The translations under genes and the position numbers were made by a program. Below the pieces are notes generated by a model. It was given only the letters and a program-made list of their open reading frames with translations, made no database searches and was not told the DNA's origin. Shown in pieces: positions 6,416 to 58,873 of a DNA stretch of 64,000 nt (positions within the stretch are counted from its first letter, which is position 1; the number at the start of each line of letters is the position of its first letter). The stretch lies in the IMG/VR virus record IMGVR_UViG_3300009158_000031, positions 190,394 through 254,393 of that record, one strand, 5' to 3'.

Positions 6416-6463
6416 TGTTAATAACTTTCAATAATTAAATTTTTTTATTCCGCAAAAAAGTAT
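6416..6463 (+). promoter_or_regulatory. promoter repeat copy 1 (truncated, lacks TATATTT)
   Basis: TGTTAATAACTTT...TTTTTTATTCCGCAAAAAAGTAT runs directly into the ATG at 6462. Confidence 0.7.
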
Positions 6464-6686
6464 GACAAAAGAAAAATTAGATAAGGAATTACGAGAGCTT
6501 GCCGTGGGCGCAATCGATGCTGGAGACATAGACGATTCAATGGCATTCGATATTGCGGATGGCTGGCTAATGGATAATCCAACCGCGAATGCAGCGATCA
6601 AGAAGTACTATGGCGCAAGCGATGCACAAGGCTTTGTGGCCAATCGAATCTGTTGGCCTAACGTCCGAAACTTACTTAACCCTTAA
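6462..6686 (+). CDS. hypothetical protein, higher GC than neighbours
   Basis: ORF with GCC/GGC/GCG codons. Confidence 0.55.
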   Translation: MTKEKLDKELRELAVGAIDAGDIDDSMAFDIADGWLMDNPTANAAIKKYYGASDAQGFVANRICWPNVRNLLNP

Positions 6687-6713
6687 AACCAATTAACATG
6701 ACAACCCAGGAGA

Positions 6714-7313
6714 ATGATAGACAATCTAGAAATAATAAAGAGCATTCTTAATTTCCAGAAGCGAGGTGACTTCTATATGTTATACGTTTTCAAACGCAAG
6801 AAAGATCAACCTGAAGGAGAACGTAATAATCATCAATCAGTAAGAACTATTAAAACTTATTGCATCGAAAGTATCGATCATCTAGAAAGACGATACGATG
6901 AAATCCGTCAAATGTGCGAAATGTTTAAAGCCCGAGCATATATACATGTACAAAAGCAAAATCACTTTGATGTTTCTCTTAATATGATGGTTGCACTTGC
7001 TCAACGAATTCAAGATGGAAACGTCAATCAAAAAGGTTTATTCGATTCGGTTGTTGGTCAAATCAAAACGCAAGAAAAACTTTGGATAGTCGATATCGAT
7101 ACACAAGATCTACAAGAACTAAGAAACATTCAAGTAACTATTAATCAATGCAAACCAGAAGGACCAAAAACTAAATACATCGTTCCAACTAAAAACGGAT
7201 GGCATTTAATTACTGATCGTTTCGACGTATTAGAATTTTCAAAGAAACATCCTGAAGTAGATATCCAAAAGAAGAACCCTACTTTATTATATTTACCTAA
7301 TAGCTTATCTTAA
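6714..7313 (+). CDS. conserved phage protein with AEP/PrimPol-like motifs
   Basis: WIVDID and TKNGWHLI resemble AEP motifs I and II; function uncertain. Confidence 0.5.
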   Translation: MIDNLEIIKSILNFQKRGDFYMLYVFKRKKDQPEGERNNHQSVRTIKTYCIESIDHLERRYDEIRQMCEMFKARAYIHVQKQNHFDVSLNMMVALAQRIQDGNVNQKGLFDSVVGQIKTQEKLWIVDIDTQDLQELRNIQVTINQCKPEGPKTKYIVPTKNGWHLITDRFDVLEFSKKHPEVDIQKKNPTLLYLPNSLS

Positions 7314-7315
7314 AT

Positions 7316-7377
7316 TGTTAATAACTTTTTACGAAAACAGTTTTTTATTCCACAAAAAAGTATTATATTTATACTAT
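7316..7377 (+). promoter_or_regulatory. promoter repeat copy 2
   Basis: TGTTAATAACTTT; TATTCC at +30; TATATTTA at +48. Confidence 0.8.
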
Positions 7378-7394
7378 AATTAAATACTCAAAAT

Positions 7395-7685
7395 ATGAAA
7401 AACTTTCGAATCGTTATTAAATGTCAAGGTGGTTTCTTAACTATCATCGATAAAAAAACTGAATCCGTAATGGATATTATGAAATCTTTCGTAACACCAA
7501 AAACTATTCTAACAATCGAACAAAAATCCGAAGCATCTGATAATTACTTTACGGTATTCGCAACTAAAGGTTCTAAAGTACATATCGCTTCAAAAGAAAT
7601 TTACGATTCAAACTATATTCAATCATATTGGCCAACAACCGATATGAACAGAATTGGTAAACCAGTAACCGAATGGAGAAACTAA
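7395..7685 (+). CDS. hypothetical early protein
   Basis: ORF directly after promoter repeat. Confidence 0.65.
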   Translation: MKNFRIVIKCQGGFLTIIDKKTESVMDIMKSFVTPKTILTIEQKSEASDNYFTVFATKGSKVHIASKEIYDSNYIQSYWPTTDMNRIGKPVTEWRN

Positions 7686-7698
7686 AAACAAAACATAT

Positions 7699-7899
7699 AT
7701 GCTAAAATTCGAAAATCTAAAAACCGGCGATCGCTTTACTGCGAACACAAATTTTGAAAGTAATGTTGTAAAAATCATTGAGGAATTAACCTATTATGGA
7801 ATATCCGAAACTGGATTACATATAGGATTAACCAAAGATGGTGAACGAATGGGATTCTATGATTTTGACATTATTGATATTATTCACGTAGAAAAATAA
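7699..7899 (+). CDS. hypothetical protein
   Basis: ORF with A-rich leader. Confidence 0.6.
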   Translation: MLKFENLKTGDRFTANTNFESNVVKIIEELTYYGISETGLHIGLTKDGERMGFYDFDIIDIIHVEK

Positions 7900-7903
7900 A
7901 AAT

Positions 7904-8128
7904 ATGATATGTAAATGTAACTCGGAAATACATCCGAAAAGAATTGAATTAGGTTATAAAACGTGTACTGGATGTTCAACCGAAGAAATGAAAGCCGTTA
8001 TACAAATTAACAATCACAAGACCGGGAACGAAATCCAAATCGTTGATCAGGAAACAGCAAGACAATTTAATTTCTTAGCTAGCCGATCATCATTTGGCGT
8101 ATCAACCGGTGTAAAAGGAAGAAGATAA
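7904..8128 (+). CDS. small zinc-finger protein (DksA/TraR-like C4)
   Basis: CKC-x3-I-x3-R-x7-CTGC. Confidence 0.6.
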   Translation: MICKCNSEIHPKRIELGYKTCTGCSTEEMKAVIQINNHKTGNEIQIVDQETARQFNFLASRSSFGVSTGVKGRR

Positions 8129-8132
8129 AACT

Positions 8133-9140
8133 ATGGAAAGAAAATTAGCAAGCATTCAAGTCATTCGAGACATTCGTCCTATTGAAGGAGCAGATGCAAT
8201 CGAATTAGCAATCATTAATGATTGGCAAGTAGTAGTCGCAAAAAGCGTAGGTCATCAAGTTGGCGATCATGTTGTTTATTGTGAAATTGATTCATTCTTA
8301 CCTATAAGAGAAGAATTCGAATTCTTGCGAAAAAGTTCTTATAGGAAGATGGATGATCTAGAAGGATTTCGTCTTAGGACTATAAAACTTCGAGGACAAA
8401 TATCACAAGGACTTATCGTACCAATAAGTATATTTGGTGATTTTGGATGGACCGCATATGAAGGTCTTGATGTTACCGAAAGATTAGGAATTATAAAATA
8501 CGAACCACCTATCCCTGCAGAATTAGCCGGTAAAGTAAAAGGAAACTTTCCTTCATTTATACCAAAGACTGACGAAGAAAGAATTCAAAATCTAACTGAC
8601 AAATATGAGACTTGGAAAACTCAACCATTTTATGTTACTGAAAAATTAGATGGATCATCCGCAACCTACTACTTCCGCAATGGAGAATTTGGAGTGTGTT
8701 CTAGAAATCTAGATCTTGAAGAAACTGAAGGTAATACCTTTTGGAAGATTGCTCGAGAATTAAAGATAGAAGAATGGTTAGGAACACAATCAATTAATTA
8801 TGCCATTCAAGGTGAGTTAATTGGTGAAGGTATTCAAGGAAATCCTTATAAGATCAAAGGACAAACGGTTCGCTTCTTTAACGCATTCAATATAGACAAA
8901 TATGAATACTTAAGTTTAGAAGAATTCGAATCCCTAATCACTTCAATGAAGTTAAAAACCGTTCCAATTATCGATCGTGCATTTACTTTACCTAATACAA
9001 TCGAAGAACTTCTTAATTATGCCGATAAGAAAAGTGAATTGAATAATCAATTTGATCGTGAAGGTGTCGTTATTCGTAGTATCGATCGAAAAATCAGTTT
9101 CAAAGTAATCAGTAACAAATTTCTACTAAACGAAAAATAA
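8133..9140 (+). CDS. RNA ligase, DRB0094/Rnl5 family
   Basis: RKLASI N-terminus, KTDEERIQN, TEKLDGSS, GELIGEGIQGN, EGVV, FKVIS. Confidence 0.9.
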   Translation: MERKLASIQVIRDIRPIEGADAIELAIINDWQVVVAKSVGHQVGDHVVYCEIDSFLPIREEFEFLRKSSYRKMDDLEGFRLRTIKLRGQISQGLIVPISIFGDFGWTAYEGLDVTERLGIIKYEPPIPAELAGKVKGNFPSFIPKTDEERIQNLTDKYETWKTQPFYVTEKLDGSSATYYFRNGEFGVCSRNLDLEETEGNTFWKIARELKIEEWLGTQSINYAIQGELIGEGIQGNPYKIKGQTVRFFNAFNIDKYEYLSLEEFESLITSMKLKTVPIIDRAFTLPNTIEELLNYADKKSELNNQFDREGVVIRSIDRKISFKVISNKFLLNEK

Positions 9141-9481
9141 TGAGAAACCTACTAATAGCACTCCTATGTATTGTTCTAGGACAATCAATTTCCTTTATAC
9201 AACTACAAGGACAATTCATAAACGAATGGATGAAGAATAACATTTGGGCATCAGTTCTTCTTGGATTACCTATTAGTTGGTTGCTTATAACCTTTACTCG
9301 ATATTGTAAAGACGCTTTCGATGGTCAAATATGGCCAGGGAGATTAATTGGATTTGCAATAGGTGCTATCGTATTTACGATAATGTCGCAAATTATTTTC
9401 AAAGAAACATTAACTGCCAAAACCGTTTCCTGCTTATTTTTAGCAGTTTGTATTTTGGCAATTCAATTATTATGGAAATGA
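9140..9481 (+). CDS. four-TM membrane protein (SMR/DMT-like)
   Basis: Four hydrophobic helices in 113 aa. Confidence 0.6.
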   Translation: MRNLLIALLCIVLGQSISFIQLQGQFINEWMKNNIWASVLLGLPISWLLITFTRYCKDAFDGQIWPGRLIGFAIGAIVFTIMSQIIFKETLTAKTVSCLFLAVCILAIQLLWK

Positions 9482-9852
9482 AATTAGAAGTATTTAAAGA
9501 GACGATCAACCGATTAAAGGAACAAAACGAATCTATTGATAGAGCTTACAAAGCTGGTATAGATTTGATAAATTTCTTAGATCCAATAGAAAGTGCAGTA
9601 TCTCATTTGATTGGATCTATCTATGGTATTGAAGGTAAAGAAGTTTTTGATTGGTGGTGTTATGAAAAAGAATGGGGAACTAGAAAGGATTTTAATATGA
9701 CAGATCGTGAAGGAAATGTAATGTGCGAAACTATAGAAGATCTACATACTTGGTTAGAAGAAAATGCATCAAATGATTATATTCTACCTAGAAGATTAAG
9801 TGATGAGGAGCGAGAAGAGGCAATAAAGATTGCATTCGGATTTGGTGCCTAA
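9478..9852 (+). CDS. hypothetical protein
   Basis: Start moved to the ATGA overlap; FDWWCYEKEWG motif. Confidence 0.6.
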   Translation: MKLEVFKETINRLKEQNESIDRAYKAGIDLINFLDPIESAVSHLIGSIYGIEGKEVFDWWCYEKEWGTRKDFNMTDREGNVMCETIEDLHTWLEENASNDYILPRRLSDEEREEAIKIAFGFGA

Positions 9853-9898
9853 ATTAATAACATTCAACATACATATAATTAATAATAAAAACTCTCAC

Positions 9899-10126
9899 AT
9901 GAAAAAACCATTATCTAAAATTGCTTATTTTCTACTACTATTTTTTGTTGCACATCAATTAGGTAGATTAGGATTTAATTGGATGGAATCCCATAATTCA
10001 TTTTTAAGTTGGACTGGAGCTCTATCTATAATTGTTTCTATTACTACATGTCTTATATGTGGTTGGAATATTGGATCAAACTTGGCTGACATCGTAATCC
10101 ATTGGAGATCTAATAGAAAGAAGTAA
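9899..10126 (+). CDS. small membrane protein
   Basis: Start moved to ATG after the CATATAAT motif; two TM segments. Confidence 0.55.
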   Translation: MKKPLSKIAYFLLLFFVAHQLGRLGFNWMESHNSFLSWTGALSIIVSITTCLICGWNIGSNLADIVIHWRSNRKK

Positions 10127-10128
10127 AA

Positions 10129-10190
10129 TGTTAATAACTTTTAGACTCGAAATTTTTTAATCTCAAGTTTTTGTATTATATTTGTTATAT
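10129..10190 (+). promoter_or_regulatory. promoter repeat copy 3
   Basis: TGTTAATAACTTT...TATTATATTTG. Confidence 0.75.
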
Positions 10191-10213
10191 TAAATTCATA
10201 TAAAATATACAAC

Positions 10214-10513
10214 ATGAAAAAATCATTAATTATTGCTTTATTAGCACTTCCTATTTTGAGTTACTCACAAACGGAAATGGGAAACTTTGCACAAGTAAAC
10301 TCTAAAAAAGATACGCTATTTCTTTTAGAAAACGATCCATTAACGAAGTTAACTTTCAAAATTTGGAAATCCGATTCTACTTGGAATGGACAAAATCCCA
10401 CTATCGTTTTCGTCAAAGCGAAAGAAATGGAAGAAATTAAATTTGCTTATTTTAGAAAATCTAATGAATTCGTAAGAATGAGAAAAACTCCCATCAAAAC
10501 TAAAAACAAATAA
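10214..10513 (+). CDS. exported protein
   Basis: Signal peptide followed by Gln (SYS|Q). Confidence 0.65.
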   Translation: MKKSLIIALLALPILSYSQTEMGNFAQVNSKKDTLFLLENDPLTKLTFKIWKSDSTWNGQNPTIVFVKAKEMEEIKFAYFRKSNEFVRMRKTPIKTKNK

Positions 10514-10521
10514 ACCATACA

Positions 10522-17367: not shown

Positions 17368-17652
17368 ATGGCAGACGAAAAAAATTCTACTTCAGGATTT
17401 ACTGATACCTTCTTTTCTAAATTAAAAGAGCAATCATTTACTATCATACTTATGATAGCCGTCATTTGGTATCAAGGTAAATTGATGGAAGAGAGAGTTG
17501 CGTATTGGCAAAAATTATATGAAGAGCAAAAAGCTTATACTGAGCAAAGTGTAAAAGAAGATAAACAAATTATGTTAGATCGAATTCGGTATCTTCAAGA
17601 ACAACGAGATAAGTATGTTGAAGATGCAATAAACGAATTAAAAACAAAATAA
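17368..17652 (+). CDS. single-TM coiled-coil protein, holin candidate
   Basis: One TM then charged coil; directly after endolysin. Confidence 0.5.
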   Translation: MADEKNSTSGFTDTFFSKLKEQSFTIILMIAVIWYQGKLMEERVAYWQKLYEEQKAYTEQSVKEDKQIMLDRIRYLQEQRDKYVEDAINELKTK

Positions 17653-22444: not shown

Positions 22445-22569
22445 TAATCTAGTACAGATCACTCCCTTGCAAGTAGAGTAAATAAAAAGTTTGCTCACTC
22501 TAAACACACTCTTCTAATATAATCTACTACATCTTATATAGGATAAACCGCTTTATATAGAAGGTAATA

Positions 22570-22900
22570 CGCTATATAAGGTAATAATCTATATAGATAA
22601 CTCTCCTCCTCGTCTGACTAGTCGTGGTGTTGTGAGCGGAGAAATCCGGTAAGCCACGGAGGAAGCCGGTATTTGCAGATCCGCTTATAGTGACACCTTT
22701 TGTTTTCCGCATTCTCACAAAGATTTGCCGCATATACCAACGAGCCGTTAAGTACCGAGGAATCCATAATCGTAATGGCTCTCAATCACCCAGGGCTCGT
22801 TGCTAACTCCCATCACCAAAGCTACTCCGTCCACAACCCGCCTACCCTTATATAGTGATAATTGGATCCGGTGGTAATTCCGCCTTACCTTATATAAGGA
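22570..22900 (+). ncRNA. GC-rich structured non-coding element of unknown class
   Basis: Several stems read by eye, including CAACGAGCC/GGCTCGTTG; no long ORF. Confidence 0.45.
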
Positions 22901-22925
22901 ATATTGAATCCAGTAGCGATTAAGA

Positions 22926-22987
22926 TGTTAATAACTTTCTCACAAAACATTTTTTTATTACAACCTTTTTTATTATATTTGTATATA
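22926..22987 (+). promoter_or_regulatory. promoter repeat copy 4
   Basis: TGTTAATAACTTT...TATTATATTTG. Confidence 0.8.
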
Positions 22988-23007
22988 CATAATAACTAAT
23001 ACACTAT

Positions 23008-23286
23008 ATGGAAGAACAAGAAGATTTTAATCAGGAACTCGATCCTGTACAAAAGGCCGAGTTAGAATTACAATATCAAGAAGAAATAGGAAAGGCCATG
23101 AGAAGTGCATTTGCTTATATAGAGGAAGATCTAGGCTGGGAGGCTTGGATCGAGAATCGAGTGATTGGTGACGCGGCCAAGAAGCGGAGAATCCTCGATA
23201 ATATGATGAAATGGTTTGCTTCTCCAGAGGTGGAGGAATATGAGAAATCCGCTCGCATCAAAAGGGCTATTGATACTCTCGTATAG
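23008..23286 (+). CDS. acidic protein with UVR-like C-terminal motif
   Basis: EEYEKSARIK. Confidence 0.6.
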   Translation: MEEQEDFNQELDPVQKAELELQYQEEIGKAMRSAFAYIEEDLGWEAWIENRVIGDAAKKRRILDNMMKWFASPEVEEYEKSARIKRAIDTLV

Positions 23287-23288: not shown

Positions 23289-23370
23289 TGTTAATAACTT
23301 TGTTAATAAGTTTTGAAACAAATAGTAAAATAAATTTTTTTATTCCACAAATAAGTATTATATTTATATA
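23289..23370 (+). promoter_or_regulatory. promoter repeat copy 5 (two tandem boxes)
   Basis: TGTTAATAAC at 23289, TGTTAATAAG at 23301, TATTCCACA at 23341. Confidence 0.8.
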
Positions 23371-23398
23371 TTATTTAATTAACTTAAAAAAGATCTAT

Positions 23399-23653
23399 AT
23401 GCAAATCAATCAAATTAAAACCGGTTCCTTTATTCGTAACAGCGGTGGATTTACCTTCCACGTAACACTTACCGAGAAGTTCGCTCACCTTCACCCTATC
23501 GATGATAACACATCTACCTCAACGAAGGTACTACCTATAGCGGTATTCAATCAGTTAATTCGTAATCACAACTTCGTTACCGTTACCAATCCCAATAACG
23601 CACACGAAAGAATTCTTACTAAATCATATGGATCAAGATTATTAACACAATAA
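23399..23653 (+). CDS. hypothetical early protein
   Basis: Start moved to MQINQ after the promoter. Confidence 0.6.
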   Translation: MQINQIKTGSFIRNSGGFTFHVTLTEKFAHLHPIDDNTSTSTKVLPIAVFNQLIRNHNFVTVTNPNNAHERILTKSYGSRLLTQ

Positions 23654-23716
23654 TGTTAATAACTTTCCCATCAAACATTTTTTTATACCAAAAAAAAGTA
23701 TTATATTTATACTATA
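23654..23716 (+). promoter_or_regulatory. promoter repeat copy 6
   Basis: Same architecture and spacing. Confidence 0.8.
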
Positions 23717-23749
23717 TTTAAAAATCAAATAAAACAAAAAAAATCAATT

Positions 23750-24067
23750 ATGGCAAAATCATCTAGAGGCGGATTAACAGTTTACGATAAACAAGATGTG
23801 GTAATATCACAATTCGCAAAAATCGTACGTAACGAACAATACAGAAAAGAACCAACATGGTTCGAACAACAGGTAATCGATTCTAAACAACGTACTGCGG
23901 ATTATCAAAAACGTATGGTGAACAACCCACCTCAACCCCGTATCTCACACTATAATCCAGACAATATCTTAAATCGCACCAGACACTTATCTGCGGAAGA
24001 TCGTAAAATCGCAATCAAACAATTTCTTAAAGAAGAAAAGGCTGCTAATAATTTAATCAATCAGTAA
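23750..24067 (+). CDS. hypothetical early protein
   Basis: ORF after promoter. Confidence 0.65.
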   Translation: MAKSSRGGLTVYDKQDVVISQFAKIVRNEQYRKEPTWFEQQVIDSKQRTADYQKRMVNNPPQPRISHYNPDNILNRTRHLSAEDRKIAIKQFLKEEKAANNLINQ

Positions 24068-25562: not shown

Positions 25563-25612
25563 GAGTAAGGAACTGCGAGTGGAGAAAACCACTCTAATTT
25601 GATAATACCACT

Positions 25613-25639
25613 AAGGCTGCTCACTAGAGTGGCCTTTTT
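25613..25639 (+). terminator. intrinsic terminator
   Basis: AAGGCTGCTC-ACTA-GAGTGGCCTT then TTT. Confidence 0.75.
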
Positions 25640-25682
25640 GTGGTTTACACAGCGAGACTGCCCTATTACTCACCTTTACCAC

Positions 25683-26030
25683 CTAGAAGAGACTAGATAC
25701 CTTCTAGTCTCACCTAATAAGGGCCTGTACAGATCTAGACCAGCAAAACAACATCCTACTAGATCTAGATCTTAACAAGAAGAGCCTAGATAGACTAGAT
25801 GAGTACTAGCAGTGTACTAGTAGGATCTATTAAGGCTAGAAGCAGACTAGAAGAGCTCAATATATCCACATATAGGACAGAAGAGTGCTATAAAGACTCA
25901 TATATACTCATTATATCACCGATAGATCATCTAGAAGCCGCTGAGGTGAGCTATAGGGACTAGAAAGTCAAAAAAAGGTCACAAAAAGCCAAAAAGGATC
26001 ACTTTTAGCCAAAAAGGATCAAAAAGGCCA
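25683..26030. repeat. helically phased CTAG array and phased A-tract repeats
   Basis: 14 CTAG within 25683-25963; AGCCAAAAAGGATCA at 25987 and 26007. Confidence 0.8.
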
Positions 26031-39328: not shown

Positions 39329-39390
39329 TGTTAATAACTTTCCCGTAATAAATTTTTTTATTCCAAAAAGTTTTATTATATTTGTATATA
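39329..39390 (+). promoter_or_regulatory. promoter repeat copy 7
   Basis: Same architecture and spacing. Confidence 0.8.
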
Positions 39391-39409
39391 CAATTTAAAC
39401 AAATATACT

Positions 39410-39604
39410 ATGGAAAATAATTTTGAAGTATCCGATCTTGAATTACTCACAACATCGGAATTAAAAACTCTACTAATCGATTTATTCGATGGTAATGCAG
39501 GTGAAATTCTTTATGGTTTTCGAGAAATGGGAATTACCAAAGATGCTAATCTTAAATCGGCAATAATCCGATACATCATTCGTAAACAACCCATCAATGC
39601 ATAA
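39410..39604 (+). CDS. hypothetical early protein
   Basis: ORF after promoter. Confidence 0.6.
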   Translation: MENNFEVSDLELLTTSELKTLLIDLFDGNAGEILYGFREMGITKDANLKSAIIRYIIRKQPINA

Positions 39605-39917
39605 ACGAAGAAGCGATCGTAACCATCTCATCTACAAAATAGAAAATCTCTCAACCGGAGAATTCTATATAGGAGTTACAGTCGTAACCGGTAGAGCATA
39701 TCTTAAATCTCTTAAATCTCGATGGAAGCGACATATCTATAAAGCAATGGTGCTTCGTGAAGAATGGTTATTTCCAAAAGCGATTCGCGAATATGGCGAA
39801 TCTCAATTTAAACCTGAGATTATCGAAATTGTACGTGGTAAATCTACCGCATTCGGAAGAGAATCTCAACTTATTAACGAAATCCGACCAGCATACAACA
39901 CACGAATGAAATGTTAA
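39597..39917 (+). CDS. GIY-YIG nuclease
   Basis: LIYKIEN..TGEFYIG..RWKRH...AIREYG...E...YN. Confidence 0.85.
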   Translation: MHKRRSDRNHLIYKIENLSTGEFYIGVTVVTGRAYLKSLKSRWKRHIYKAMVLREEWLFPKAIREYGESQFKPEIIEIVRGKSTAFGRESQLINEIRPAYNTRMKC

Positions 39918-39995
39918 TAACTTTTTTACATTTAGCCAAAAATAAGTTTCAAAAAATTTTTTTATTCCAATAAAAAGTATTATATTTGTTATATC
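39912..39995 (+). promoter_or_regulatory. promoter repeat copy 8 (box 21 bp further upstream)
   Basis: TGTTAATAAC 39912, TATTCC 39963, TATATTTG. Confidence 0.8.
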
Positions 39996-40027
39996 AATTT
40001 AATATTAATCTTTTAAACTCAAAAAAT

Positions 40028-40339
40028 ATGAAATCTAAATCAAGTATCGAAAAAATTGCTGCAATTCAATCATTAGTATCGAAATCATTTAACATCGAAC
40101 TACCTAAATTACTTTCACCATCTCGTACTGGTGAAATTGCATACATTCGCCAAATATCAATGTATCTATGCAGATTCAACACAACCGCTTCTCTTAAAAT
40201 AATTGCGGCCGAACATAATCGTACTAATCACGGTACCGTTATCCATGCTTCCGAAGTAATTGGATTCGATTATCGCAAAAACGAAAAAGTACGTAATCAA
40301 ATCATCGCATTAGAAACCCAAATTAAAACAATAGCATAA
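40028..40339 (+). CDS. stand-alone DnaA domain IV (C-terminal HTH) protein
   Basis: LLSPSR...AYIRQISMYLCR..T..SL..I....NRTNHGTVIHA; start moved to ATG 40028. Confidence 0.85.
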   Translation: MKSKSSIEKIAAIQSLVSKSFNIELPKLLSPSRTGEIAYIRQISMYLCRFNTTASLKIIAAEHNRTNHGTVIHASEVIGFDYRKNEKVRNQIIALETQIKTIA

Positions 40340-42444: not shown

Positions 42445-42508
42445 TGTTAATAACTTTCCATCAATAAATTTTTTTATTCCACTTATTTGTTTTATATTTG
42501 TATATACA
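42445..42508 (+). promoter_or_regulatory. promoter repeat copy 9
   Basis: Same architecture and spacing. Confidence 0.8.
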
Positions 42509-42524
42509 ATTTAAAACAATATAT

Positions 42525-42785
42525 ATGCGAACACATGCTTCAACAACTTACTTCGAAACGCAATCATCCGCTTTAAACGAAGCATTTCAACACGTTCAAT
42601 CTCGAGGTTATTTGGTAAACGAACCCGATAATCTATGGACTGAACATGTTTCATACGGAACAACCGTTCACTATAATCTTCCTCTTATTCTCGAACGAAC
42701 AGGTAATCCTGCTCGTAAATGGTTGCATGTAAATCTTCATCGTATGGATTCAGGAAGATATGAATTAAACTACTACTTAAATTAA
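42525..42785 (+). CDS. hypothetical early protein
   Basis: Start moved to MRTH; RMDSGRYELNYY end. Confidence 0.65.
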   Translation: MRTHASTTYFETQSSALNEAFQHVQSRGYLVNEPDNLWTEHVSYGTTVHYNLPLILERTGNPARKWLHVNLHRMDSGRYELNYYLN

Positions 42786-42791: not shown

Positions 42792-43019
42792 ATGATAAGA
42801 AAAAAAGAAGAACAAACCGGACCTATCGTTATCGATCTTACTGGTCCTGATGGTAATGCATTCGCCATAATCTCATATGCAAATCGTTTCGCAAAACAAA
42901 TGGAAATGCAACCAAACGATCGAGCACAAATGAATACCGATCTTATGTCTGGAGATTATGAACATCTCCTTCAAGTATTCGATAAGCACTTTGGTGAATT
43001 CGTTATTCTTGAACGATAA
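42792..43019 (+). CDS. conserved small phage protein
   Basis: IDLTGPDGNAF...MSGDYEHLL. Confidence 0.75.
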   Translation: MIRKKEEQTGPIVIDLTGPDGNAFAIISYANRFAKQMEMQPNDRAQMNTDLMSGDYEHLLQVFDKHFGEFVILER

Positions 43020-43024: not shown

Positions 43025-43087
43025 TGTTAATAACTTTTTGTCAAAATATTTTTTTATTCCACAAATTTGTTTTATATTTGTTATATC
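43025..43087 (+). promoter_or_regulatory. promoter repeat copy 10
   Basis: Same architecture and spacing. Confidence 0.8.
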
Positions 43088-43110
43088 AAATTAATTAAAA
43101 AATCATATAC

Positions 43111-44205
43111 ATGGAAGCAATCCAATTAACAAATGCTCAAATCCTCAAAGCTGAAAAACGTCATGAACGTTCGAGATTTGCAGATAAGTATCAGCTAAAA
43201 AACCCATACAATGGAACTGAATATTTGTTCCGTGGAATATGGCGTTCAAATCGAGAATTTATTATTTCTCGAGGAACAGAAACTTATTTGGTACCATTTG
43301 ATAATGTGAATCCAAATCCAACAAACGCAAAAATCGAATCTGCTGAGAATCGCAAAATCGAATTGGTACTTATTGATGATCTACATTATGATGATCGTAT
43401 CTTTCAACCAATGCGAACCGGAACCCCAATCGATTACATGTTTTCAAACGATGGTGGAATTTATCCGGCTACAAATTACATGGTTATCGGTGATCCTGGC
43501 ATTGGGAAATCTACACAAACACTTGATCTCCTTGCAAAAATCAAAAAGAACGAACCTCATCGAAAAATACTTTTCATCTCTGGCGAAATGAATCAAATCG
43601 ATATGTATGGTTATGTTAAACGTTATCCATCATTCGGTAAAATACCTACTCTCTTCCTTTGTGATTATCTAGACGAGGATCCTAAAGAAATCATCGAACA
43701 AACATTTAATCAAGGTTGGGATATCATCCTTATCGATTCATTTATCGAAGTTCAAGAATCCGTTCAAGCTTCTTCAAATATGACAAGAACTGCAGCAGAA
43801 AAATGGTTAATCGATATGATGGTCACTCAAAATAAAGGAAACAATGAAGCAAATCTATTTACATCCGTACTTGCAATTCAACAAGTAACTAAGGGTGGTA
43901 ATTTCGTTGGTTCCAATAAATTAAAACATAATACAACCGGTATGATCGAATTAAGATACTCATCCGAATTTACCGGTGATCGTTATGCTAAGGTAACTAA
44001 AAATCGTCGAGGTTTCAAATACGAAAAAATATACTTCTCTCTTGATAATCCACTCGAAGTAGAATACGATCAAAAACGACTTGAACGAGATGAAGAAATT
44101 CGTAAACGTTTACAACGTGAAAAAGAAACTCTTCTTTCCGAGGAAGAGAAATTCAATAAGATTTTCGGTATCATACAACCGGAATTAACCGAAACAGAAA
44201 ATTAA
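43111..44205 (+). CDS. RadA/Sms-like RecA-fold ATPase (no Zn finger or Lon-like domain)
   Basis: GDPGIGKST, ISGE, ILIDS, VTKGG, KNRRG. Confidence 0.8.
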   Translation: MEAIQLTNAQILKAEKRHERSRFADKYQLKNPYNGTEYLFRGIWRSNREFIISRGTETYLVPFDNVNPNPTNAKIESAENRKIELVLIDDLHYDDRIFQPMRTGTPIDYMFSNDGGIYPATNYMVIGDPGIGKSTQTLDLLAKIKKNEPHRKILFISGEMNQIDMYGYVKRYPSFGKIPTLFLCDYLDEDPKEIIEQTFNQGWDIILIDSFIEVQESVQASSNMTRTAAEKWLIDMMVTQNKGNNEANLFTSVLAIQQVTKGGNFVGSNKLKHNTTGMIELRYSSEFTGDRYAKVTKNRRGFKYEKIYFSLDNPLEVEYDQKRLERDEEIRKRLQREKETLLSEEEKFNKIFGIIQPELTETEN

Positions 44206-44245: not shown

Positions 44246-44758
44246 ATGCAAGCTACAAAAGCAACACCAGTAAGAAAAGATCGCGATCTAATGCGTCAAA
44301 AATCTAATGCCAGTCCTGTTCTCCTTAAACATTGGGAAGCTAATTACACACATTTTCATCGTAATGTAATTAATCCATCATTGTTAAAACAGGAAGATCT
44401 TGGCCTTGAATTTAAACATAAAGAAAGAACTTTTAAAATTATCGGAATGACTTCTATTTGGACAATGATCGTCGAAGAGATTCGCGAACCAGGAATGAAA
44501 CCGGTGTATTGGGAATGTTCTCGACATTTTGTTCAATTCGCATTAGGCCGTAAAATTCAAGAGTACTTCAAAATTAAAGGAAAGATACATGAACGTCCTA
44601 GAGATTATGATGCAGTGCAATTATATCTTCCACCAATTTCCGTTCTTAGAAAATTGAAAATTGATAAGGATGAAGATGAAATTCAAGAAACTAAACCTAA
44701 ATTCGAGATCTTTCAAGAAGACAACACAAAGGACGATTACAATAACGAATACGAATAA
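44246..44758 (+). CDS. hypothetical protein
   Basis: Operon ORF. Confidence 0.6.
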   Translation: MQATKATPVRKDRDLMRQKSNASPVLLKHWEANYTHFHRNVINPSLLKQEDLGLEFKHKERTFKIIGMTSIWTMIVEEIREPGMKPVYWECSRHFVQFALGRKIQEYFKIKGKIHERPRDYDAVQLYLPPISVLRKLKIDKDEDEIQETKPKFEIFQEDNTKDDYNNEYE

Positions 44759-44759
44759 T

Positions 44760-45401
44760 ATGAAATATCTATCAATCGACATAGAAACATCTGGCTTAGA
44801 TCCGGAAAACAATCAGATACTTTCAATCGGAGCAATCATTGAAGATACGGAAAACCGGCTACCATTCGATGAGATTCCTAAATTTCATGTATGCATATTG
44901 ACTGATCAATTAACCGGATCTCCATTTGCACTCGACATGAATCGTGAACTCATCGAATCAATGGTTCATTATCAAACTGCCGAGGATCAAGATGAAAAGA
45001 ATGATTTAGTAAACATGACTGGCATGCAATTCTTACAACGAGATAATGTGGTTGAATCTTTCTACGATTTCTTATTTCGTAATGGAGTCGTGGAAAATGT
45101 TGATTTTCCTATTAATCCAGGATTAAGTTCTAAAATGAAACCGGTAACAATCAATGTAGCCGGTAAGAATTTCGGTACATTCGACAAGTTATTTCTTGAA
45201 CGTTTACCTCGTTGGAAACAAGCAATCCGAATCCGTCAACGAATTATCGATCCATCAATACTTTTCATTGATTGGAAAGCCGATAATGCAATGCCTTCAT
45301 TAAACACCTGCAAAGTTCGAGCAAAAATTGGTGGTATCGTAACTCATAATGCTATCGAAGATGCATGGGATGTAATTCAATTATTAAGAACTCAATATTA
45401 A
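44760..45401 (+). CDS. DEDDh 3'-5' exonuclease
   Basis: SIDIETSGLD, GKNFGTFD, HNAIEDA; start moved to MKYL. Confidence 0.85.
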   Translation: MKYLSIDIETSGLDPENNQILSIGAIIEDTENRLPFDEIPKFHVCILTDQLTGSPFALDMNRELIESMVHYQTAEDQDEKNDLVNMTGMQFLQRDNVVESFYDFLFRNGVVENVDFPINPGLSSKMKPVTINVAGKNFGTFDKLFLERLPRWKQAIRIRQRIIDPSILFIDWKADNAMPSLNTCKVRAKIGGIVTHNAIEDAWDVIQLLRTQY

Positions 45402-48287: not shown

Positions 48288-48350
48288 TGTTAATAACTTT
48301 TTTCAAAAAGATTTTTTTATTCCGCAAAGATTTATTATATTTGTATATAC
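48288..48350 (+). promoter_or_regulatory. promoter repeat copy 11
   Basis: Same architecture and spacing. Confidence 0.8.
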
Positions 48351-48367
48351 CATTTAATAATAAACAT

Positions 48368-48619
48368 ATGAAAATCAAAAACCAAACCAAAACCGTAATC
48401 AAATCTGAAATTTTATCAATCGCCGAAGAAATGTCTGCTAATGATTTTATCAACGAATTTAGTAGTCTATTAACATTTGAAGATATTGATAATTTACTCG
48501 ATGTAAATGAAGGATTTACTAATGTTTCTATCGAAGTAAAAGATGGTAAAAAATATTTAAAAAATGAAACCATCTTCATCTTATTTTGCGATGGTAAATT
48601 CGATTCATACTCAAATTAA
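48368..48619 (+). CDS. hypothetical early protein
   Basis: Start moved to MKIK after promoter. Confidence 0.6.
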   Translation: MKIKNQTKTVIKSEILSIAEEMSANDFINEFSSLLTFEDIDNLLDVNEGFTNVSIEVKDGKKYLKNETIFILFCDGKFDSYSN

Positions 48620-50128: not shown

Positions 50129-50208
50129 GCCCTTATGGTGGAATTGGTAGACATGCCAGACTTAGGATCTGGTGCTTAGGCGTGTAGGTTCGAGTCCTAC
50201 TAAGGGTA
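50129..50208 (+). tRNA. tRNA-Leu(TAG)
   Basis: GCCCTTA/TAAGGGT acceptor, CCAGA-CTTAGGA-TCTGG, variable arm, GTTCGAGTC; CCA not encoded. Confidence 0.95.
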
Positions 50209-50225
50209 CTTAAAATAACTATATT

Positions 50226-50548: not shown

Positions 50549-50620
50549 TGCGGGATAGAGCAGTGGTAGCTCGGCGGGCTCATAACCCGTAGGTCGCAGG
50601 TTCGAATCCTGCTCCCGCTA
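50549..50620 (+). tRNA. initiator tRNA-fMet(CAT)
   Basis: 1:72 mismatch, GGG/CCC in anticodon stem, CTCATAA loop, GTTCGAATC. Confidence 0.93.
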
Positions 50621-50622
50621 CT

Positions 50623-55374: not shown

Positions 55375-55407
55375 TATGTCATTCATATAATTACTAAATC
55401 GTAATTA

Positions 55408-56388: not shown

Positions 56389-56408
56389 TAAATATAAATC
56401 TAAAAATA

Positions 56409-56633
56409 ATGAGTTTTAATAAACGATACCTAAGCGAAGATTCTATTAGATCTCATGCAAAATCAAATCCAGATTCATTCCATTGGTTTGAAAGATACAT
56501 GGTTTATGCCGATGCATATATCATTGATACCACTAAAGGAGATTTTGCCGAAAAGATATACGAGAAATTCGGTGAAGGAAATGAAGAAGTAAGAAGAGAA
56601 ATACACAGACAATTAGTAAATGACGAAATATGA
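56409..56633 (+). CDS. hypothetical protein
   Basis: MSFNKRY; operon ORF. Confidence 0.6.
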   Translation: MSFNKRYLSEDSIRSHAKSNPDSFHWFERYMVYADAYIIDTTKGDFAEKIYEKFGEGNEEVRREIHRQLVNDEI

Positions 56634-57388
56634 AAATAACAAAACCTATCGTATTCTTCGATATCGAATCAACCGGAATTAATACTACCCGTGATCGTAT
56701 TGTAGAATTACAAATGATTAAAGTTACTGCCAATGGTGAAGAGGAATGGTATTCTAAATTCAATCCTCATCCAGTAGTAATTTCTGATGAAGCTGCATCT
56801 GTTCATGGTATCTCAAATGAAGATGTTATGGATGCTCCTAAATTCGAAGAACGAGCAAAAGATATTTTAGCCTTTATTGAAGGTTGTGATTTAGCTGGAT
56901 ATAACATTCAGAATTTTGACATTCCTATGTTATTCGAAGAATTTTGTAGAGCTAATACTTTATTCGATTGGAAGAAACATCGTCTTCTAGATTCATATGC
57001 ACTTTGGACTTATTTCGAACCTCGAACTTTGACTGGTGCAGTTGAACGTTTTCTCGGTGAGAAATTTGAAAATGCTCACTCTGCAAAATGGGACGTGGAT
57101 GCAACTAAACGAGTATTCTTTAAACAAATGGAAACTTACAAATTTACTGAATCGGATTTCGACGACGTTATTGAAAAATCTAAAAAAGACAATCGAATAG
57201 ATTTGACCGGTAAATTCGTTAAGAAAGATAATAACGTATTCTATGGATTTGGTAAATATAATGGAAAATCCGTAATGGAAATTAATAAAGTAGATCCAGG
57301 ATATCTTGATTGGATTGCCAATAAATCTGAGTTATCTATGGATTGTAAAATGATTGCTAAAAAATTAATCACTCACATAAACAAATAA
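56630..57388 (+). CDS. DnaQ-like (Pol III epsilon) 3'-5' exonuclease
   Basis: FFDIESTG, HGI, GYN..FD, AHSA..D, C-terminal FGKY. Confidence 0.9.
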   Translation: MKITKPIVFFDIESTGINTTRDRIVELQMIKVTANGEEEWYSKFNPHPVVISDEAASVHGISNEDVMDAPKFEERAKDILAFIEGCDLAGYNIQNFDIPMLFEEFCRANTLFDWKKHRLLDSYALWTYFEPRTLTGAVERFLGEKFENAHSAKWDVDATKRVFFKQMETYKFTESDFDDVIEKSKKDNRIDLTGKFVKKDNNVFYGFGKYNGKSVMEINKVDPGYLDWIANKSELSMDCKMIAKKLITHINK

Positions 57389-57389
57389 T

Positions 57390-57755
57390 ATGGAAGATAT
57401 ACAATTATCAAAATCCTTTTCAGATGATGGAAATACTCCTAATGCATCTAAAGCTCTTAGCTCATACTTGAGTATATGGGTTACCAGTGAACCAATTGGA
57501 ATTAAAATTATTCCTTCAGGTTGGACCGATCCTAGAATGTATCATGTTCTAGTTGAATGGGGTGATACAAACGAAACGGATTATCATTTTCTAGATGCGG
57601 ATCAAATCAAAGAACAAATGGGTATTGATATATCCGAAAATGATTTTGTTTCGTATATAGTAACAAATGATGAGCTATTAGAAAACTCAAATGATTATGA
57701 CTTAGGATCGAAAATTAGAAGCACTCTATATAAAAATGATAAAACCGGTAAATAA
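57390..57755 (+). CDS. hypothetical protein
   Basis: Operon ORF. Confidence 0.6.
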   Translation: MEDIQLSKSFSDDGNTPNASKALSSYLSIWVTSEPIGIKIIPSGWTDPRMYHVLVEWGDTNETDYHFLDADQIKEQMGIDISENDFVSYIVTNDELLENSNDYDLGSKIRSTLYKNDKTGK

Positions 57756-58809
57756 TATAAGACGTAGCATTGAACTCACTAATCTCTATGATATGGGTGA
57801 AAAAATGTGGTGGAAAGATAATGACCATATGTTTTCCAATTGGAGACGTAAGAATTTCATAGTAAATGAAAAGGTCTGGAATGATTGGGTAGATAAAAAT
57901 GTCGATATTGAATGTTGTGAATTGAAGACTCGTGATGTCGTAGAGAATTATGCCGGTAGAACTAAAACCGTAAATTCTACAATTTTTACATGTGGAGTTT
58001 CTACTCCAAGTGAAGGTGAAATCGAAATTGAATATGTTCATCTTCGTTGGGATTTGAAGAGAGGAAACGATGCAGTTAAGAAAATGATTACGGAAATAGA
58101 AGATATGTGTATTATACACAAAGAAAAATCTTCTGTTCAATTGCTAGTTAAAGATAATGGAGATCTTGATCTTCGAGCTTTTGAAATTCATAAACCGAAT
58201 ATCGATCTAAAAATGAATTATGATGATGAATGGAATGATAAACATAATTATCTCATGAATCAACTTAACATGAAGGAAAAAAAAGGAATTGTTCTTCTTC
58301 ATGGACATCCTGGAACTGGAAAGACAATGTATATTCGACACCTTATTTCTTTGTTATCTGAAAAGAGAACCGTCATATATCTTCCTAATCAGCTAATCGA
58401 TTCATTAACAGATCCTTCATTTATTCCTTTGTTATCTGATTATAGTGGATCTATTATAATTATTGAAGATGCCGATGAAGCTATTCGATCTAGAAAAACT
58501 GGTGGTGCATCAGTTGATAAATTACTTAATCTAGCCGATGGTATACTTTCAGATTTTCTAGGCATTCAATTTATCTGTACATTTAATTGCCCTATTACTA
58601 CAATCGATGATGCTCTACTTCGTAAAGGTCGCCTAATCTTCCGACATGAATTTGATAAACTTCCAATCGCGAAAGCTCAGGCATTAAGCGATCATTTAGG
58701 TTTTGATACTAAAATTGACAAAGCCATGACACTTGCCGAAATCTATAATCAAGAGAAGAAATTTAGCGAAGAAGATAAATTAGATAAAAAACGAATAGGC
58801 TTTTATTAA
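57736..58809 (+). CDS. AAA+ ATPase
   Basis: GHPGTGKT, IIIED, LLN..DG, ALLRKGR. Confidence 0.9.
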   Translation: MIKPVNNIRRSIELTNLYDMGEKMWWKDNDHMFSNWRRKNFIVNEKVWNDWVDKNVDIECCELKTRDVVENYAGRTKTVNSTIFTCGVSTPSEGEIEIEYVHLRWDLKRGNDAVKKMITEIEDMCIIHKEKSSVQLLVKDNGDLDLRAFEIHKPNIDLKMNYDDEWNDKHNYLMNQLNMKEKKGIVLLHGHPGTGKTMYIRHLISLLSEKRTVIYLPNQLIDSLTDPSFIPLLSDYSGSIIIIEDADEAIRSRKTGGASVDKLLNLADGILSDFLGIQFICTFNCPITTIDDALLRKGRLIFRHEFDKLPIAKAQALSDHLGFDTKIDKAMTLAEIYNQEKKFSEEDKLDKKRIGFY

Positions 58810-58810
58810 T

Positions 58811-58873
58811 TGTTAATAACTTTTTGTCAATAAAGTTTTTTATTCCACAAATTTTTATTATATTTGTTATATC
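58811..58873 (+). promoter_or_regulatory. promoter repeat copy 12
   Basis: Same architecture and spacing. Confidence 0.8.

What the first reader, a model, noticed from the sequence alone, without database searches (positions are those of the whole stretch)
6416..58873. Twelve promoters with a helically phased DnaA-box-like site, plus a phage-encoded mini-DnaA
Seen: TGTTAATAACTTT starts at 6416, 7316, 10129, 22926, 23289, 23654, 39329, 39912, 42445, 43025, 48288 and 58811, always intergenic and 5' of a gene. A T-tract plus TATTCC-like element starts 30 bp after it in nine copies and 29 bp in one. The exceptions are +51 (39912) and +40/+52 (double box at 23301/23289), i.e. whole helical turns. 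TATATTT(G/A) follows at +48 in the standard copies checked. Established: TAnnTTTG is the Bacteroidota housekeeping -7 element, and the DnaA box consensus is TTWTNCACA. TTATTAACA (reverse of the box) and TATTCCACA (in several copies) are each 8/9 matches. ORF 40028-40339 is a lone DnaA domain IV behind one copy. Inference: host DnaA may activate or be titrated by these promoters, and the phage domain IV may compete for feedback shut-off and/or oriC blockade.
Basis: partly seen in the sequence, partly recalled or inferred. Interest (0 to 1): 0.85.

Follow-up and report, generated by a model that had tools for sequence, protein, structure and literature searches.

The report
Phage promoter cassettes with phased upstream box
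A large uncultured phage of Bacteroidota starts many non-structural transcription units with one near-identical 75-bp promoter whose invariant 13-bp upstream box always sits a whole number of DNA turns from the core promoter, which points to a bound regulator, but nothing shows that this regulator is host DnaA.

Summary
TGTTAATAACTTT occurs 12 times, all on the + strand, against 0.02 expected. Each copy heads a roughly 75-bp unit: box, A-rich stretch, T-tract, then a Bacteroidota-type -7 element (TATATTTG/A), a short leader and ATG. Copy 6416 is a half unit without a -7 element.

The window is the last 64 kb of a 254-kb IMG/VR contig, a jumbo phage of Bacteroidota. The same box and core occur in many other uncultured phage contigs. 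They are essentially absent from 185,579 bacterial and archaeal genomes.

Over 65 distinct promoters, the distance from box start to the -7 element is only 47/48, 58/59 or 69/70 bp. Helical phasing is therefore well supported.

A sister lineage keeps the core but carries a different upstream box in the same 11-bp register. This argues for a lineage-specific, probably phage-encoded reader rather than host RNA polymerase or host DnaA.

ORF 40028-40339 is a lone DnaA domain IV, but with an altered recognition signature (NHGTV, not DHTTV). The DnaA-box resemblance is weak: 8/9, reached by 1.3% of window 13-mers. TATTCCACA is not conserved in relatives.

Best reading: early or middle promoter cassettes like the PeSLs of T4-type phages, with a class-I-type operator. 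The reader protein is unidentified; the mini-DnaA is one candidate.

The parts
6416..6463 (+). Half cassette: box 6416-6428, A-rich stretch, T-tract and ATTCCGC. There is no -7 element, because the ATG of ORF 6462-6686 sits in its place.
   Evidence: matches only model positions 4-53
7316..7383 (+). Standard promoter cassette (-7 element TATATTTA at 7364), upstream of ORF 7395-7685
10129..10199 (+). Standard cassette, with a weak hairpin around the T-tract that is a clear hairpin in the ortholog L059. Upstream of ORF 10214-10513.
22926..22995 (+). Standard cassette upstream of ORF 23008-23286
23289..23375 (+). Cassette with two tandem boxes 12 bp apart: 23289-23301 exact and 23301-23313 with one mismatch. 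They lie 70 and 58 bp from the -7 element, i.e. two turns and one turn further out than standard.
23635..23721 (+). Standard cassette (box 23654-23666), preceded by an inverted 2-mismatch copy of the box at 23635-23647. Upstream of ORF 23750-24067.
39329..39399 (+). Standard cassette upstream of ORF 39410-39604
39912..40002 (+). Cassette with the box 69 bp from the -7 element (two turns further out). The box overlaps the stop codon of the GIY-YIG ORF 39597-39917. A half-box remnant AATAAGTTT lies at 39941-39949. This cassette drives the mini-DnaA gene.
40028..40339 (+). 103-aa protein made only of DnaA domain IV (helix-turn-helix). Its recognition signature is TNHGTVIHA, where cellular DnaA has DHTTV.
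42445..42515 (+). Standard cassette upstream of ORFs 42525-42785 and 42792-43019
43025..43094 (+). Standard cassette upstream of ORF 43111-44205, which gives only weak sub-threshold matches to P-loop ATPase families
48288..48357 (+). Standard cassette. The likely start of the downstream gene is the ATG at 48368.
58811..58880 (+). Standard cassette upstream of ORF 58892-59218

Best explanation
The 12 sites are copies of one promoter cassette. A roughly 254-kb phage of Bacteroidota with T4-like features uses it to start transcription units across the non-structural part of its genome.

The core of the cassette looks like a promoter for the host's main sigma factor. It has an A-rich stretch, a T-run at the -33 position, and TATATTTG/A, a perfect or near-perfect TAnnTTTG -7 element.

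The invariant 13-bp box lies about 55 bp upstream of the expected start site, or one or two DNA turns further out. It is most likely the binding site of a sequence-specific protein that touches RNA polymerase from one face of the helix, as class I activators do. Alternatively it could be a shut-off factor that needs the same geometry. That protein is probably phage-encoded and differs between phage lineages.

Shown: the repeat, its anatomy, its phage-specific distribution, the quantised spacing, and the box swap in a sister lineage. The lone DnaA domain IV is one candidate, at about 1 in 4.
For: - The repeat: 12 exact copies, all co-directional with the genes. A profile search finds no core without a box.
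- Elsewhere in the genome: the same contig carries at least 23 boxes in the 95 kb that could be read, all on the + strand.
- The -7 element matches TAnnTTTG. No other canonical TTTG-N17-21-TAnnTTTG promoter lies in intergenic DNA of the window.
- The genes behind the cassettes, in this phage and in relatives, are small ORFans plus proteins that read as NAD-dependent DNA ligase, a Nudix hydrolase and PRPP/NAD-salvage enzymes (my reading of the listed N-termini), together with an ECF-type sigma factor. This fits early or middle functions.
- The block 24.4-39.3 kb, which holds no box, has a different upstream motif, CATATAAW.
- Distribution: box plus T-tract is found in 104 viral stretches, giving 62 distinct promoter sequences in the first scan with otherwise unrelated flanks. 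Among 185,579 bacterial and archaeal genomes there were only 20 hits, of which a single one, a mis-binned phage contig, has the full promoter.
- Spacing from box to -7 element over 65 distinct promoters: 47/48 (48 promoters), 58/59 (14) and 69/70 (3), with nothing in between. About 10 independent genes have non-standard spacing.
- Tandem boxes are direct repeats 11-12 bp apart.
- The sister lineage (246-kb contig) has the same core but TGTAATATnnnTGTA in the same 11-bp register, in 10 distinct promoters within the ~50 kb read.
Against: - There is no expression or binding data. The phage is uncultured, so the start sites, the timing and the existence of a bound protein are all inferred.
- The -33 position holds a T-run, not the consensus TTTG.
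- All core promoters seen carry the box.
- Quantised spacing could partly reflect how the variants arose (tandem 11-12-bp duplications of the box followed by decay) rather than selection on helical phase.
- Part of the exact identity of the copies within one genome could be kept by recombination between cassettes, as proposed for PeSLs.
Confidence: 0.6

Rival explanations
1. The phage's own lone DnaA domain IV (ORF 40028-40339) is the protein that reads the box. It would act as activator or as feedback shut-off of all box promoters, including its own.
For: - It is a bona fide DnaA-type helix-turn-helix and sits directly behind a box promoter.
- The box read on the other strand, TTATTAACA, is 8/9 to the DnaA box.
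- The recognition signature is changed (NHGTV instead of DHTTV), so a non-canonical target is plausible.
- Four of the five lineages of its ~100-aa xNH[GA]TV subclade (window phage, L132, L133-135, L136) have box promoters in the fetched locus. About 180 other viral DnaA-IV loci do not.
- Tandem boxes are direct repeats 11-12 bp apart, as expected for a monomeric reader of an asymmetric site.
Against: - The fifth subclade lineage (L137, 246-kb contig) uses a different box, although its recognition region is nearly the same as that of L133, which has the standard box.
- The co-occurrence may only reflect shared ancestry of the phages.
- The box also occurs in several other lineages for which no mini-DnaA was found in the pieces available.
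- Short DnaA-IV proteins are common in phages. Here the gene is linked in several lineages to a winged-helix protein with DnaD_N similarity, which suggests a replication-origin role instead.
Confidence: 0.22
2. One reading: host DnaA binds the box and/or TATTCCACA, and is recruited or titrated by these promoters.
For: Two 8/9 matches to TTWTNCACA per promoter in several copies. The helical phasing shows that something binds.
Against: - A phage wanting DnaA would be expected to use the consensus. Instead, an invariant non-consensus 13-mer is kept across divergent phages.
- TATTCCACA is not conserved in relatives.
- The window has no excess of DnaA boxes.
- The box is replaced in a sister lineage with the same core promoter.
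Confidence: 0.05
3. The box plus the A-rich stretch is an UP-element-like or curved-DNA module read by the alpha subunit C-terminal domains of host RNA polymerase. No dedicated factor is involved.
For: - It is A/T-rich and lies between about -60 and -38.
- The pattern AATAACTTTTT followed by AAAA resembles the E. coli UP consensus (my comparison, from memory of Estrem et al. 1998).
- Alpha C-terminal domains also work only from one helical face, so quantised spacing fits.
- All promoters, including presumably the earliest, carry it.
Against: - Invariant G and C positions and 13/13 identity in every copy are unlike UP elements.
- The architecture is absent from bacterial genomes.
- The box is swapped in a sister lineage that keeps the same core.
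Confidence: 0.13
4. The identity of the copies is kept only by recombination between mobile promoter cassettes (PeSL-type shuffling). The box has no reader of its own.
For: - There is a half cassette at 6416 and a half-box remnant at 39941.
- Cassettes flank small ORFans and a GIY-YIG gene.
- Terminator-like hairpins are embedded in cassettes of relatives.
- PeSLs in T4-type phages behave this way (PMC4122927).
Against: - The box is conserved 13/13 between phage lineages whose spacers, leaders and proteins have diverged.
- The box is more invariant than the -33 and -7 elements.
- The spacing is quantised.
Confidence: 0.08
5. The box is the -35 element of the phage's ECF-type sigma factor (TAAC/AAC motif), making a second promoter that overlaps the host-type one.
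For: The same phage encodes a sigma factor with Sigma70_r2 and r4_2 behind a box promoter. ECF -35 elements contain AAC followed by T-rich sequence (from memory).
Against: The distance from the box to everything downstream varies by 10-11 and 21-22 bp. No common -10-like element lies at a fixed 16-17 bp from the box in the displaced copies.
Confidence: 0.03

Closest known systems
PeSLs (promoter-early stem-loop cassettes) of T4-type phages (Arbiol et al. 2010, PMC2839356; Comeau et al. 2014, PMC4122927)
   Same: - Many near-identical composite early-promoter units in the intergenic spaces of the non-structural, ORFan-rich parts of a large phage genome.
- An A/T-rich region upstream of the promoter boxes.
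- Stem-loops fused to the promoter, seen here in related phages.
- Degraded half units (6416).
- Association with small ORFans and homing-endonuclease-type genes.
   Different: - The host is Bacteroidota, so the core is -33/-7 type rather than sigma-70 -35/-10, and there is no Shine-Dalgarno sequence.
- Most window copies have no stem-loop.
- PeSLs, as read in PMC4122927, are not described with an invariant far-upstream 13-mer placed at whole helical turns, nor with a box that is swapped between lineages.
- Recombination at these cassettes was not tested here.
Class I activator-dependent promoters (CAP at -61.5, -71.5 and so on; phage P2/P4 late promoters with the Ogr/Delta site centred near -55)
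   Same: A specific upstream site centred near -55, usable at positions one or two helical turns further out but not in between. In the phage case, one site type is shared by a whole regulon.
   Different: No activator has been identified here. The boxes occur as direct repeats rather than as an inverted-repeat dimer site. This comparison rests on my knowledge of those systems, not on a test made here.
T4 middle promoters (MotA box plus AsiA)
   Same: A phage-specified box replaces or supplements normal upstream promoter recognition while the host sigma factor's downstream element is kept. One box type marks a temporal class of genes.
   Different: The MotA box sits at -30, at the -35 position, not at -55 or beyond. 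No MotA or AsiA homolog was looked for or found.
DnaA boxes and DnaA domain IV
   Same: The ORF is a true domain IV (PF08299). The box is 8/9 to TTWTNCACA on the other strand. The 11-12-bp direct-repeat register recalls arrays of low-affinity DnaA sites in oriC (from memory).
   Different: The box is never the consensus, and the CACA end is not kept. The protein lacks domains I-III and has NHGTV instead of DHTTV. There is no enrichment of canonical boxes.

Membership tests
Bacteroidota housekeeping (-33/-7) promoter | -7 element TAnnTTTG | tested here: met
   8 of 11 full cassettes have TATATTTG and 3 have TATATTTA.
Bacteroidota housekeeping (-33/-7) promoter | -33 element TTTG about 19-21 bp upstream of the -7 element | tested here: not met
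   A T-run (TTTT) occupies that position and TTTG is absent. TTTG-N17-21-TAnnTTTG finds none of the cassettes.
Bacteroidota housekeeping (-33/-7) promoter | Transcription start a few nt downstream of the -7 element | not testable with these tools
   No RNA data; the phage is uncultured.
PeSL-type mobile promoter cassette | Repeated near-identical early promoter in intergenic spaces of the non-structural regions of a T4-type phage | tested here: met
   12 copies in the window and at least 23 boxes in the 95 kb of the contig that could be read. T4-like traits: RNA ligase 1/tail-fibre attachment catalyst, a second RNA ligase, thymidylate synthase and a TATAAAT-like second motif. T4-type membership of the phage itself was not established.
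PeSL-type mobile promoter cassette | Stem-loop (terminator) fused just upstream of or within the promoter | tested here: inconclusive
   Hairpins are clear in many related phages (around the box, or around the T-tract, followed by a T-run). They are weak or absent in most window copies.
PeSL-type mobile promoter cassette | Gene gain, loss or exchange at the cassettes between close relatives | not tested
   Only hints were seen: the half cassette at 6416 and the half-box remnant at 39941.
DnaA box / DnaA-controlled promoter | 9-mer matching TTWTNCACA | tested here: not met
   The best match is 8/9, with position 6 A instead of C. 1.3% of window 13-mers do as well.
DnaA box / DnaA-controlled promoter | Conservation of the DnaA-box-like bases in orthologous promoters | tested here: not met
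   TATTCCACA is replaced by unrelated sequences in relatives. Box variants TGTTCGTAACTTT and the sister-lineage box move further from the consensus.
DnaA box / DnaA-controlled promoter | Binding by DnaA | not testable with these tools
   Needs EMSA or footprinting.
DnaA domain IV (Bac_DnaA_C, PF08299) | Profile match above Pfam's gathering score | tested here: met
   67.1 bits against a cut-off of 31.5, E 1.4e-18. PDB DnaA chains align over domain IV only.
DnaA domain IV (Bac_DnaA_C, PF08299) | DnaA signature DHTTV in the recognition helix | tested here: not met
   The window protein has NHGTV and its subclade has NH[GA]TV. Most other viral domain IV proteins keep DH[TSAG]TV.
Class I activator site | Works only at positions differing by whole helical turns | tested here: met
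   This is comparative evidence only. Spacings are 47/48, 58/59 and 69/70, with none between, in 65 distinct promoters.
Class I activator site | An identified activator that contacts RNA polymerase | not testable with these tools
   Candidates only: the mini-DnaA, other early phage proteins, or an injected protein.
UP element | A/T-tract recognition without invariant G/C, shared by host promoters | tested here: not met
   G and C positions are invariant in all copies. The architecture is absent from bacterial genomes. The box is swapped in the sister lineage.

The most novel reading that the evidence does not exclude
A lone DnaA domain IV with a re-tuned recognition helix has been taken over from replication initiation to serve as the master transcription factor of jumbo phages of Bacteroidota. 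It would read a 13-bp box placed at whole helical turns upstream of dozens of early or middle promoters. Sister lineages would have re-tuned box and protein together.
Probability: 0.2. Interest if true: 0.75.

Novelty: new variant of a known kind. Interest (0 to 1): 0.5.

Why it matters
Transcription control in phages of Bacteroidota is almost unexplored, and these hosts use an unusual promoter type.

This cassette gives a ready-made, strongly conserved promoter with a separable upstream operator. The operator's allowed positions (0, +1 and +2 turns) and a natural box swap in a sister lineage are already laid out by evolution. Reporters with 5-bp versus 10-bp spacer changes, and binding assays with a handful of small phage proteins, would directly show how a large phage steers Bacteroidota RNA polymerase.

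The cassette is also a practical marker for a widespread group of uncultured jumbo phages, and a candidate part for genetic tools in Bacteroidota. The link to DnaA, which made the finding look most striking, is the weakest part.

Tried and rejected
- Megablast of 10 kb of the window against cultured phages found no match.
- A literature search for the box sequence returned only unrelated genome-editing oligonucleotides.
- Searches for TAnnTTTG with phage promoters, and for phage DnaA domain IV, found nothing on such cassettes.
- Cultured relatives were inspected for the box and none has it: Tenacibaculum pT24, Cellulophaga phi17:2 and Chryseobacterium MA9V-1, about 35-40 kb each.
- The winged-helix protein (103 aa, TrmB/MarR/DnaD_N-like) was considered as the box reader, because it is 52-74% conserved in box lineages and linked to the mini-DnaA. 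I rejected it as a strong candidate: about 60 other phage loci encode it at 36-61% identity without any box promoter nearby.
- I tried to ask whether the large box-bearing contigs of other lineages encode a domain IV protein. One pattern had a miscounted gap. The question stays open.
- The idea that GTTAATAAC is a dimer palindrome is weakened, because tandem boxes are direct repeats.
- The box as an ECF -35 element is rejected because of the variable spacing.

Full report
**Observation.**
TGTTAATAACTTT occurs 12 times in the window at the coordinates given. All copies are on the + strand, against 0.02 expected by chance. Allowing mismatches adds one clear extra copy, TGTTAATAAGTTT at 23301.

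Printing the flanks shows that the 13-mer is only the head of a roughly 75-bp unit. The unit reads: box, about 11 variable but A-rich bases, a run of 6-7 T, ATTCC(A/G)CAAA-like bases, T(A/T)TTATATTT(G/A)T(A/T)TATA, a 20-35-nt A/T-rich leader, then ATG.

A profile built from nine standard copies recovers exactly the 12 units and nothing else. A profile of the core alone (T-tract to -7 element) finds no core without a box.

Copy 6416 is truncated. It has box, T-tract and ATTCCGC, but an ATG where the -7 element should be.

**What the genome is.**
The window is the last 64 kb of IMG/VR contig 3300009158_000031, which is 254,393 bp long. Genes are almost all on the + strand.

PHROG and Pfam hits include two RNA ligases (one of the T4 Rnl1 tail-fibre-attachment type), thymidylate synthase, a carbamoyltransferase, a GIY-YIG nuclease and an exonuclease.

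The nearest cultured relatives by protein are Cellulophaga phage phi17:2, Tenacibaculum phage pT24, the Prevotella Lak phages and crAss-like phages. The 1655-aa ORF ends in a CHU_C type IX secretion signal domain. As far as I know, that secretion system is confined to Bacteroidota.

Together with the TAnnTTTG element and the lack of Shine-Dalgarno sequences, this places the host in Bacteroidota.

**Distribution of the cassette.**
A scan of viral contigs for box-N12-TTTTTTAT gave 104 stretches. They contain 62 distinct promoter sequences from many contigs, several of them 145-254 kb long. In these, box, T-tract and -7 element are kept while spacers, leaders and downstream genes differ.

Only a few window proteins have homologs in those loci, so the motif outlives most protein similarity.

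The same scan of one genome for each of 185,579 bacterial and archaeal species gave 20 hits. Only one has the full promoter, and that one is a 5.7-kb phage-like contig binned into a Bifidobacterium MAG. The architecture is therefore a phage feature, not a host promoter type.

In the 95 kb of the home contig that could be read there are 23 boxes, all on the + strand. They lie between 100 kb and the end, with one more at the very start.

**Helical phasing.**
I collected every box-like site (TGTTnn[T/C]AA[C/G]TT) in the window and the fetched viral loci that is followed within 38-95 bp by a -7-like element with a T-run in front of it. No constraint was placed on the distance from box to T-run.

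Of 67 distinct sequences found, two were false -7 calls. The remaining 65 give distances from box start to -7 element of 47/48 (48 promoters), 58/59 (14) and 69/70 (3). There is nothing in between.

The 17 non-standard promoters lie upstream of about ten different genes and have unrelated intervening sequences. If spacings were free over 49-95 bp, ten independent promoters would all fall on four values with a probability of about 10^-11 (my arithmetic).

The A-rich stretch stays glued to the T-run in all of them. What moves is the box.

Where two boxes occur, they are direct repeats 11-12 bp apart: window 23289/23301, L045 and L334.

One caveat remains. Tandem 11-12-bp duplication followed by decay could generate such values mechanically. 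I saw no convincing decayed box in the proximal slot.

**A natural box swap.**
One relative retrieved through its mini-DnaA gene (L137, contig 3300042691_042003, 246 kb) has the same A-rich, T-run and TATATTAG core. Its upstream element is different: TGTAATATnnnTGTA, always 58 bp from the -7 element. It occurs in 10 distinct promoters within the ~50 kb of that contig read, and no standard box occurs in those pieces.

Anchored on the -7 element, its two TGTA units sit in the same 11-bp register as the standard box positions. The proximal unit often reads TGTAATAAATT, close to the standard TGTTAATAACTT.

The upstream module is therefore modular and lineage-specific, while the core is shared. This is what one expects if the core is read by host polymerase and the box by a factor that differs between phages.

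**The DnaA thread.**
ORF 40028-40339 is a genuine lone domain IV. Its recognition helix reads NHGTV where cellular DnaA has DHTTV. The residue roles are from my memory of the E. coli domain IV-DNA structure.

Short domain IV ORFs are very common in viral contigs. The protein as such is therefore not unusual.

Its closest subclade consists of ~100-aa proteins with the NH[GA]TV signature, in five lineages. Four of the five have box promoters in the fetched locus, and the fifth is the box-swap lineage. Other domain IV loci lack the box. That is a real association, but it may simply track phage ancestry.

The box-swap lineage has a recognition region almost identical to that of L133, which has the standard box. 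This speaks against a simple one-protein-one-box relation.

In several lineages the gene lies near a winged-helix protein with TrmB/MarR and weak DnaD_N similarity. This hints at an origin-binding module instead.

On the DNA side, 8/9 to TTWTNCACA is reached by 1.3% of window 13-mers. Canonical boxes are not enriched. TATTCCACA is not conserved in relatives.

The phage domain IV remains a candidate, at roughly one chance in four or five.

**Other candidates.**
The winged-helix protein is widespread in phages that have ordinary TTG...TAccTTTA promoters and no box, so it is a poor candidate.

The phage also encodes an ECF-type sigma factor behind a box promoter (L052:7345-7926). The variable distance from box to core excludes the box as its -35 element.

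**Temporal class.**
Genes behind box promoters, here and in relatives, are mostly small ORFans. The others read as NAD-dependent DNA ligase, a Nudix hydrolase, PRPP and NAD-salvage enzymes and a GIY-YIG nuclease (my reading of the listed N-termini), together with the sigma factor.

A second motif, CATATAA(A/T), occurs 21 times on the + strand and 6 times on the - strand. In most cases it lies 12-32 nt upstream of a start codon, including in front of the box-free block 24.4-39.3 kb. It resembles the T4 late promoter TATAAATA.

No other canonical host-type promoter lies in the window's intergenic DNA.

The simplest scheme is that box cassettes drive early or middle genes and CATATAAW drives late genes. 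This scheme is inferred.

**Comparison with known systems.**
The closest described thing is the PeSL of T4-type phages. PeSLs are repeated composite early-promoter/stem-loop units with an A/T-rich upstream part. They are concentrated among ORFans, sometimes degraded to halves, and are thought to mediate gene shuffling (PMC4122927; PMC2839356).

The hairpins fused to the cassettes in related phages fit this picture: a stem around the box or around the T-run, followed by a T-run. So does the half cassette at 6416.

Three features go beyond the PeSL description as read:
- the Bacteroidota-type core;
- the invariant far-upstream box at quantised positions;
- the lineage-specific replacement of that box.

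Functionally the box behaves like a class I activator site. P2 Ogr near -55 and CAP at -61.5/-71.5 are the closest parallels, from memory.

**Verdict.**
The promoter reading and the helical phasing are supported. The mini-DnaA is real. The host-DnaA mechanism is not supported, and the identity of the box reader is open.

I file this as a new variant of a known kind: phage promoter cassettes with an upstream operator. It is of moderate interest.

Noticed in passing
window, e.g. 1771, 3222, 4618, 9872, 18404, 19486, 20542, 24416, 26569, 46659, 49840, 55384: A second promoter-like motif, CATATAA(A/T), occurs 21 times on the + strand and 6 on the - strand (shuffles 10.4 +/- 3.6). It mostly lies 12-32 nt upstream of start codons, sometimes just after a hairpin. 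It resembles the T4 late promoter TATAAATA and may mark the late class.
   Followed up: partly
window 34358-39325: The 1655-aa ORF has a PKD domain and a C-terminal CHU_C type IX secretion signal (E 4.7e-14). This looks like a phage-encoded protein built for the host's Bacteroidota-specific secretion system. Its C-terminal part also matches uncultured 630-640-kb phages.
   Followed up: partly
L137, L413, L421, L442, L443 (contig IMGVR_UViG_3300042691_042003): A sister jumbo phage has the same core promoter but a different upstream box, TGTAATATnnnTGTA, at a fixed 58 bp from the -7 element, in 10 distinct promoters within the ~50 kb read.
   Followed up: yes
L052:7345-7926 (same phage, outside the window); L069, L036: An ECF-type sigma factor (Sigma70_r2 + r4_2) is encoded directly behind a box promoter in this phage and in other box-bearing lineages.
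   Followed up: partly
L033:4927-5235 (same phage); L132, L136, L179, L201: A 103-aa winged-helix protein (TrmB/MarR-like, weak DnaD_N) is linked to the mini-DnaA gene in several lineages. It is widespread in phages without the box. Together the two genes may form an origin-binding pair.
   Followed up: partly
L006, L016, L043, L059, L093 and others: In related phages the cassette embeds terminator-like hairpins. Either the box sits in the loop of a stem followed by the T-run, or the T-run sits in a loop followed by a second T-run.
   Followed up: partly
window 39597-39917: A GIY-YIG nuclease ORF ends with a stop codon that is the first TAA of the box at 39912. A homologous GIY-YIG gene sits behind a double-box promoter in L045.
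   Followed up: no
window 50129-50209 and 50549-50621: tRNA-Leu (TAG) and tRNA-Met (CAT) genes.
   Followed up: no
window 42792-43019 and 17368-17652: Two small proteins (75 and 94 aa) are 67-71% identical in a distant lineage (L016, L043, L067) where few other proteins match. There, the 75-aa gene sits behind the variant box TGTTCGTAACTTT. Function unknown.
   Followed up: no
window 40915 (-) and 41705 (+): Two of the nine perfect TTWTNCACA sites of the window lie within 800 bp of each other, inside the 400-aa ORF just downstream of the mini-DnaA gene. This may be chance.
   Followed up: no
window 44246-44758 / 44661-45401 and 9140-9481 / 9331-9852: Pairs of overlapping same-strand ORFs. The first pair includes an RNase_T-type exonuclease. 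They could be split or frameshifted genes.
   Followed up: no
window 25563-25798 and 22445-22925: Two unusually long stretches without a convincing ORF in a densely packed genome. The first contains hairpins. Not examined.
   Followed up: no
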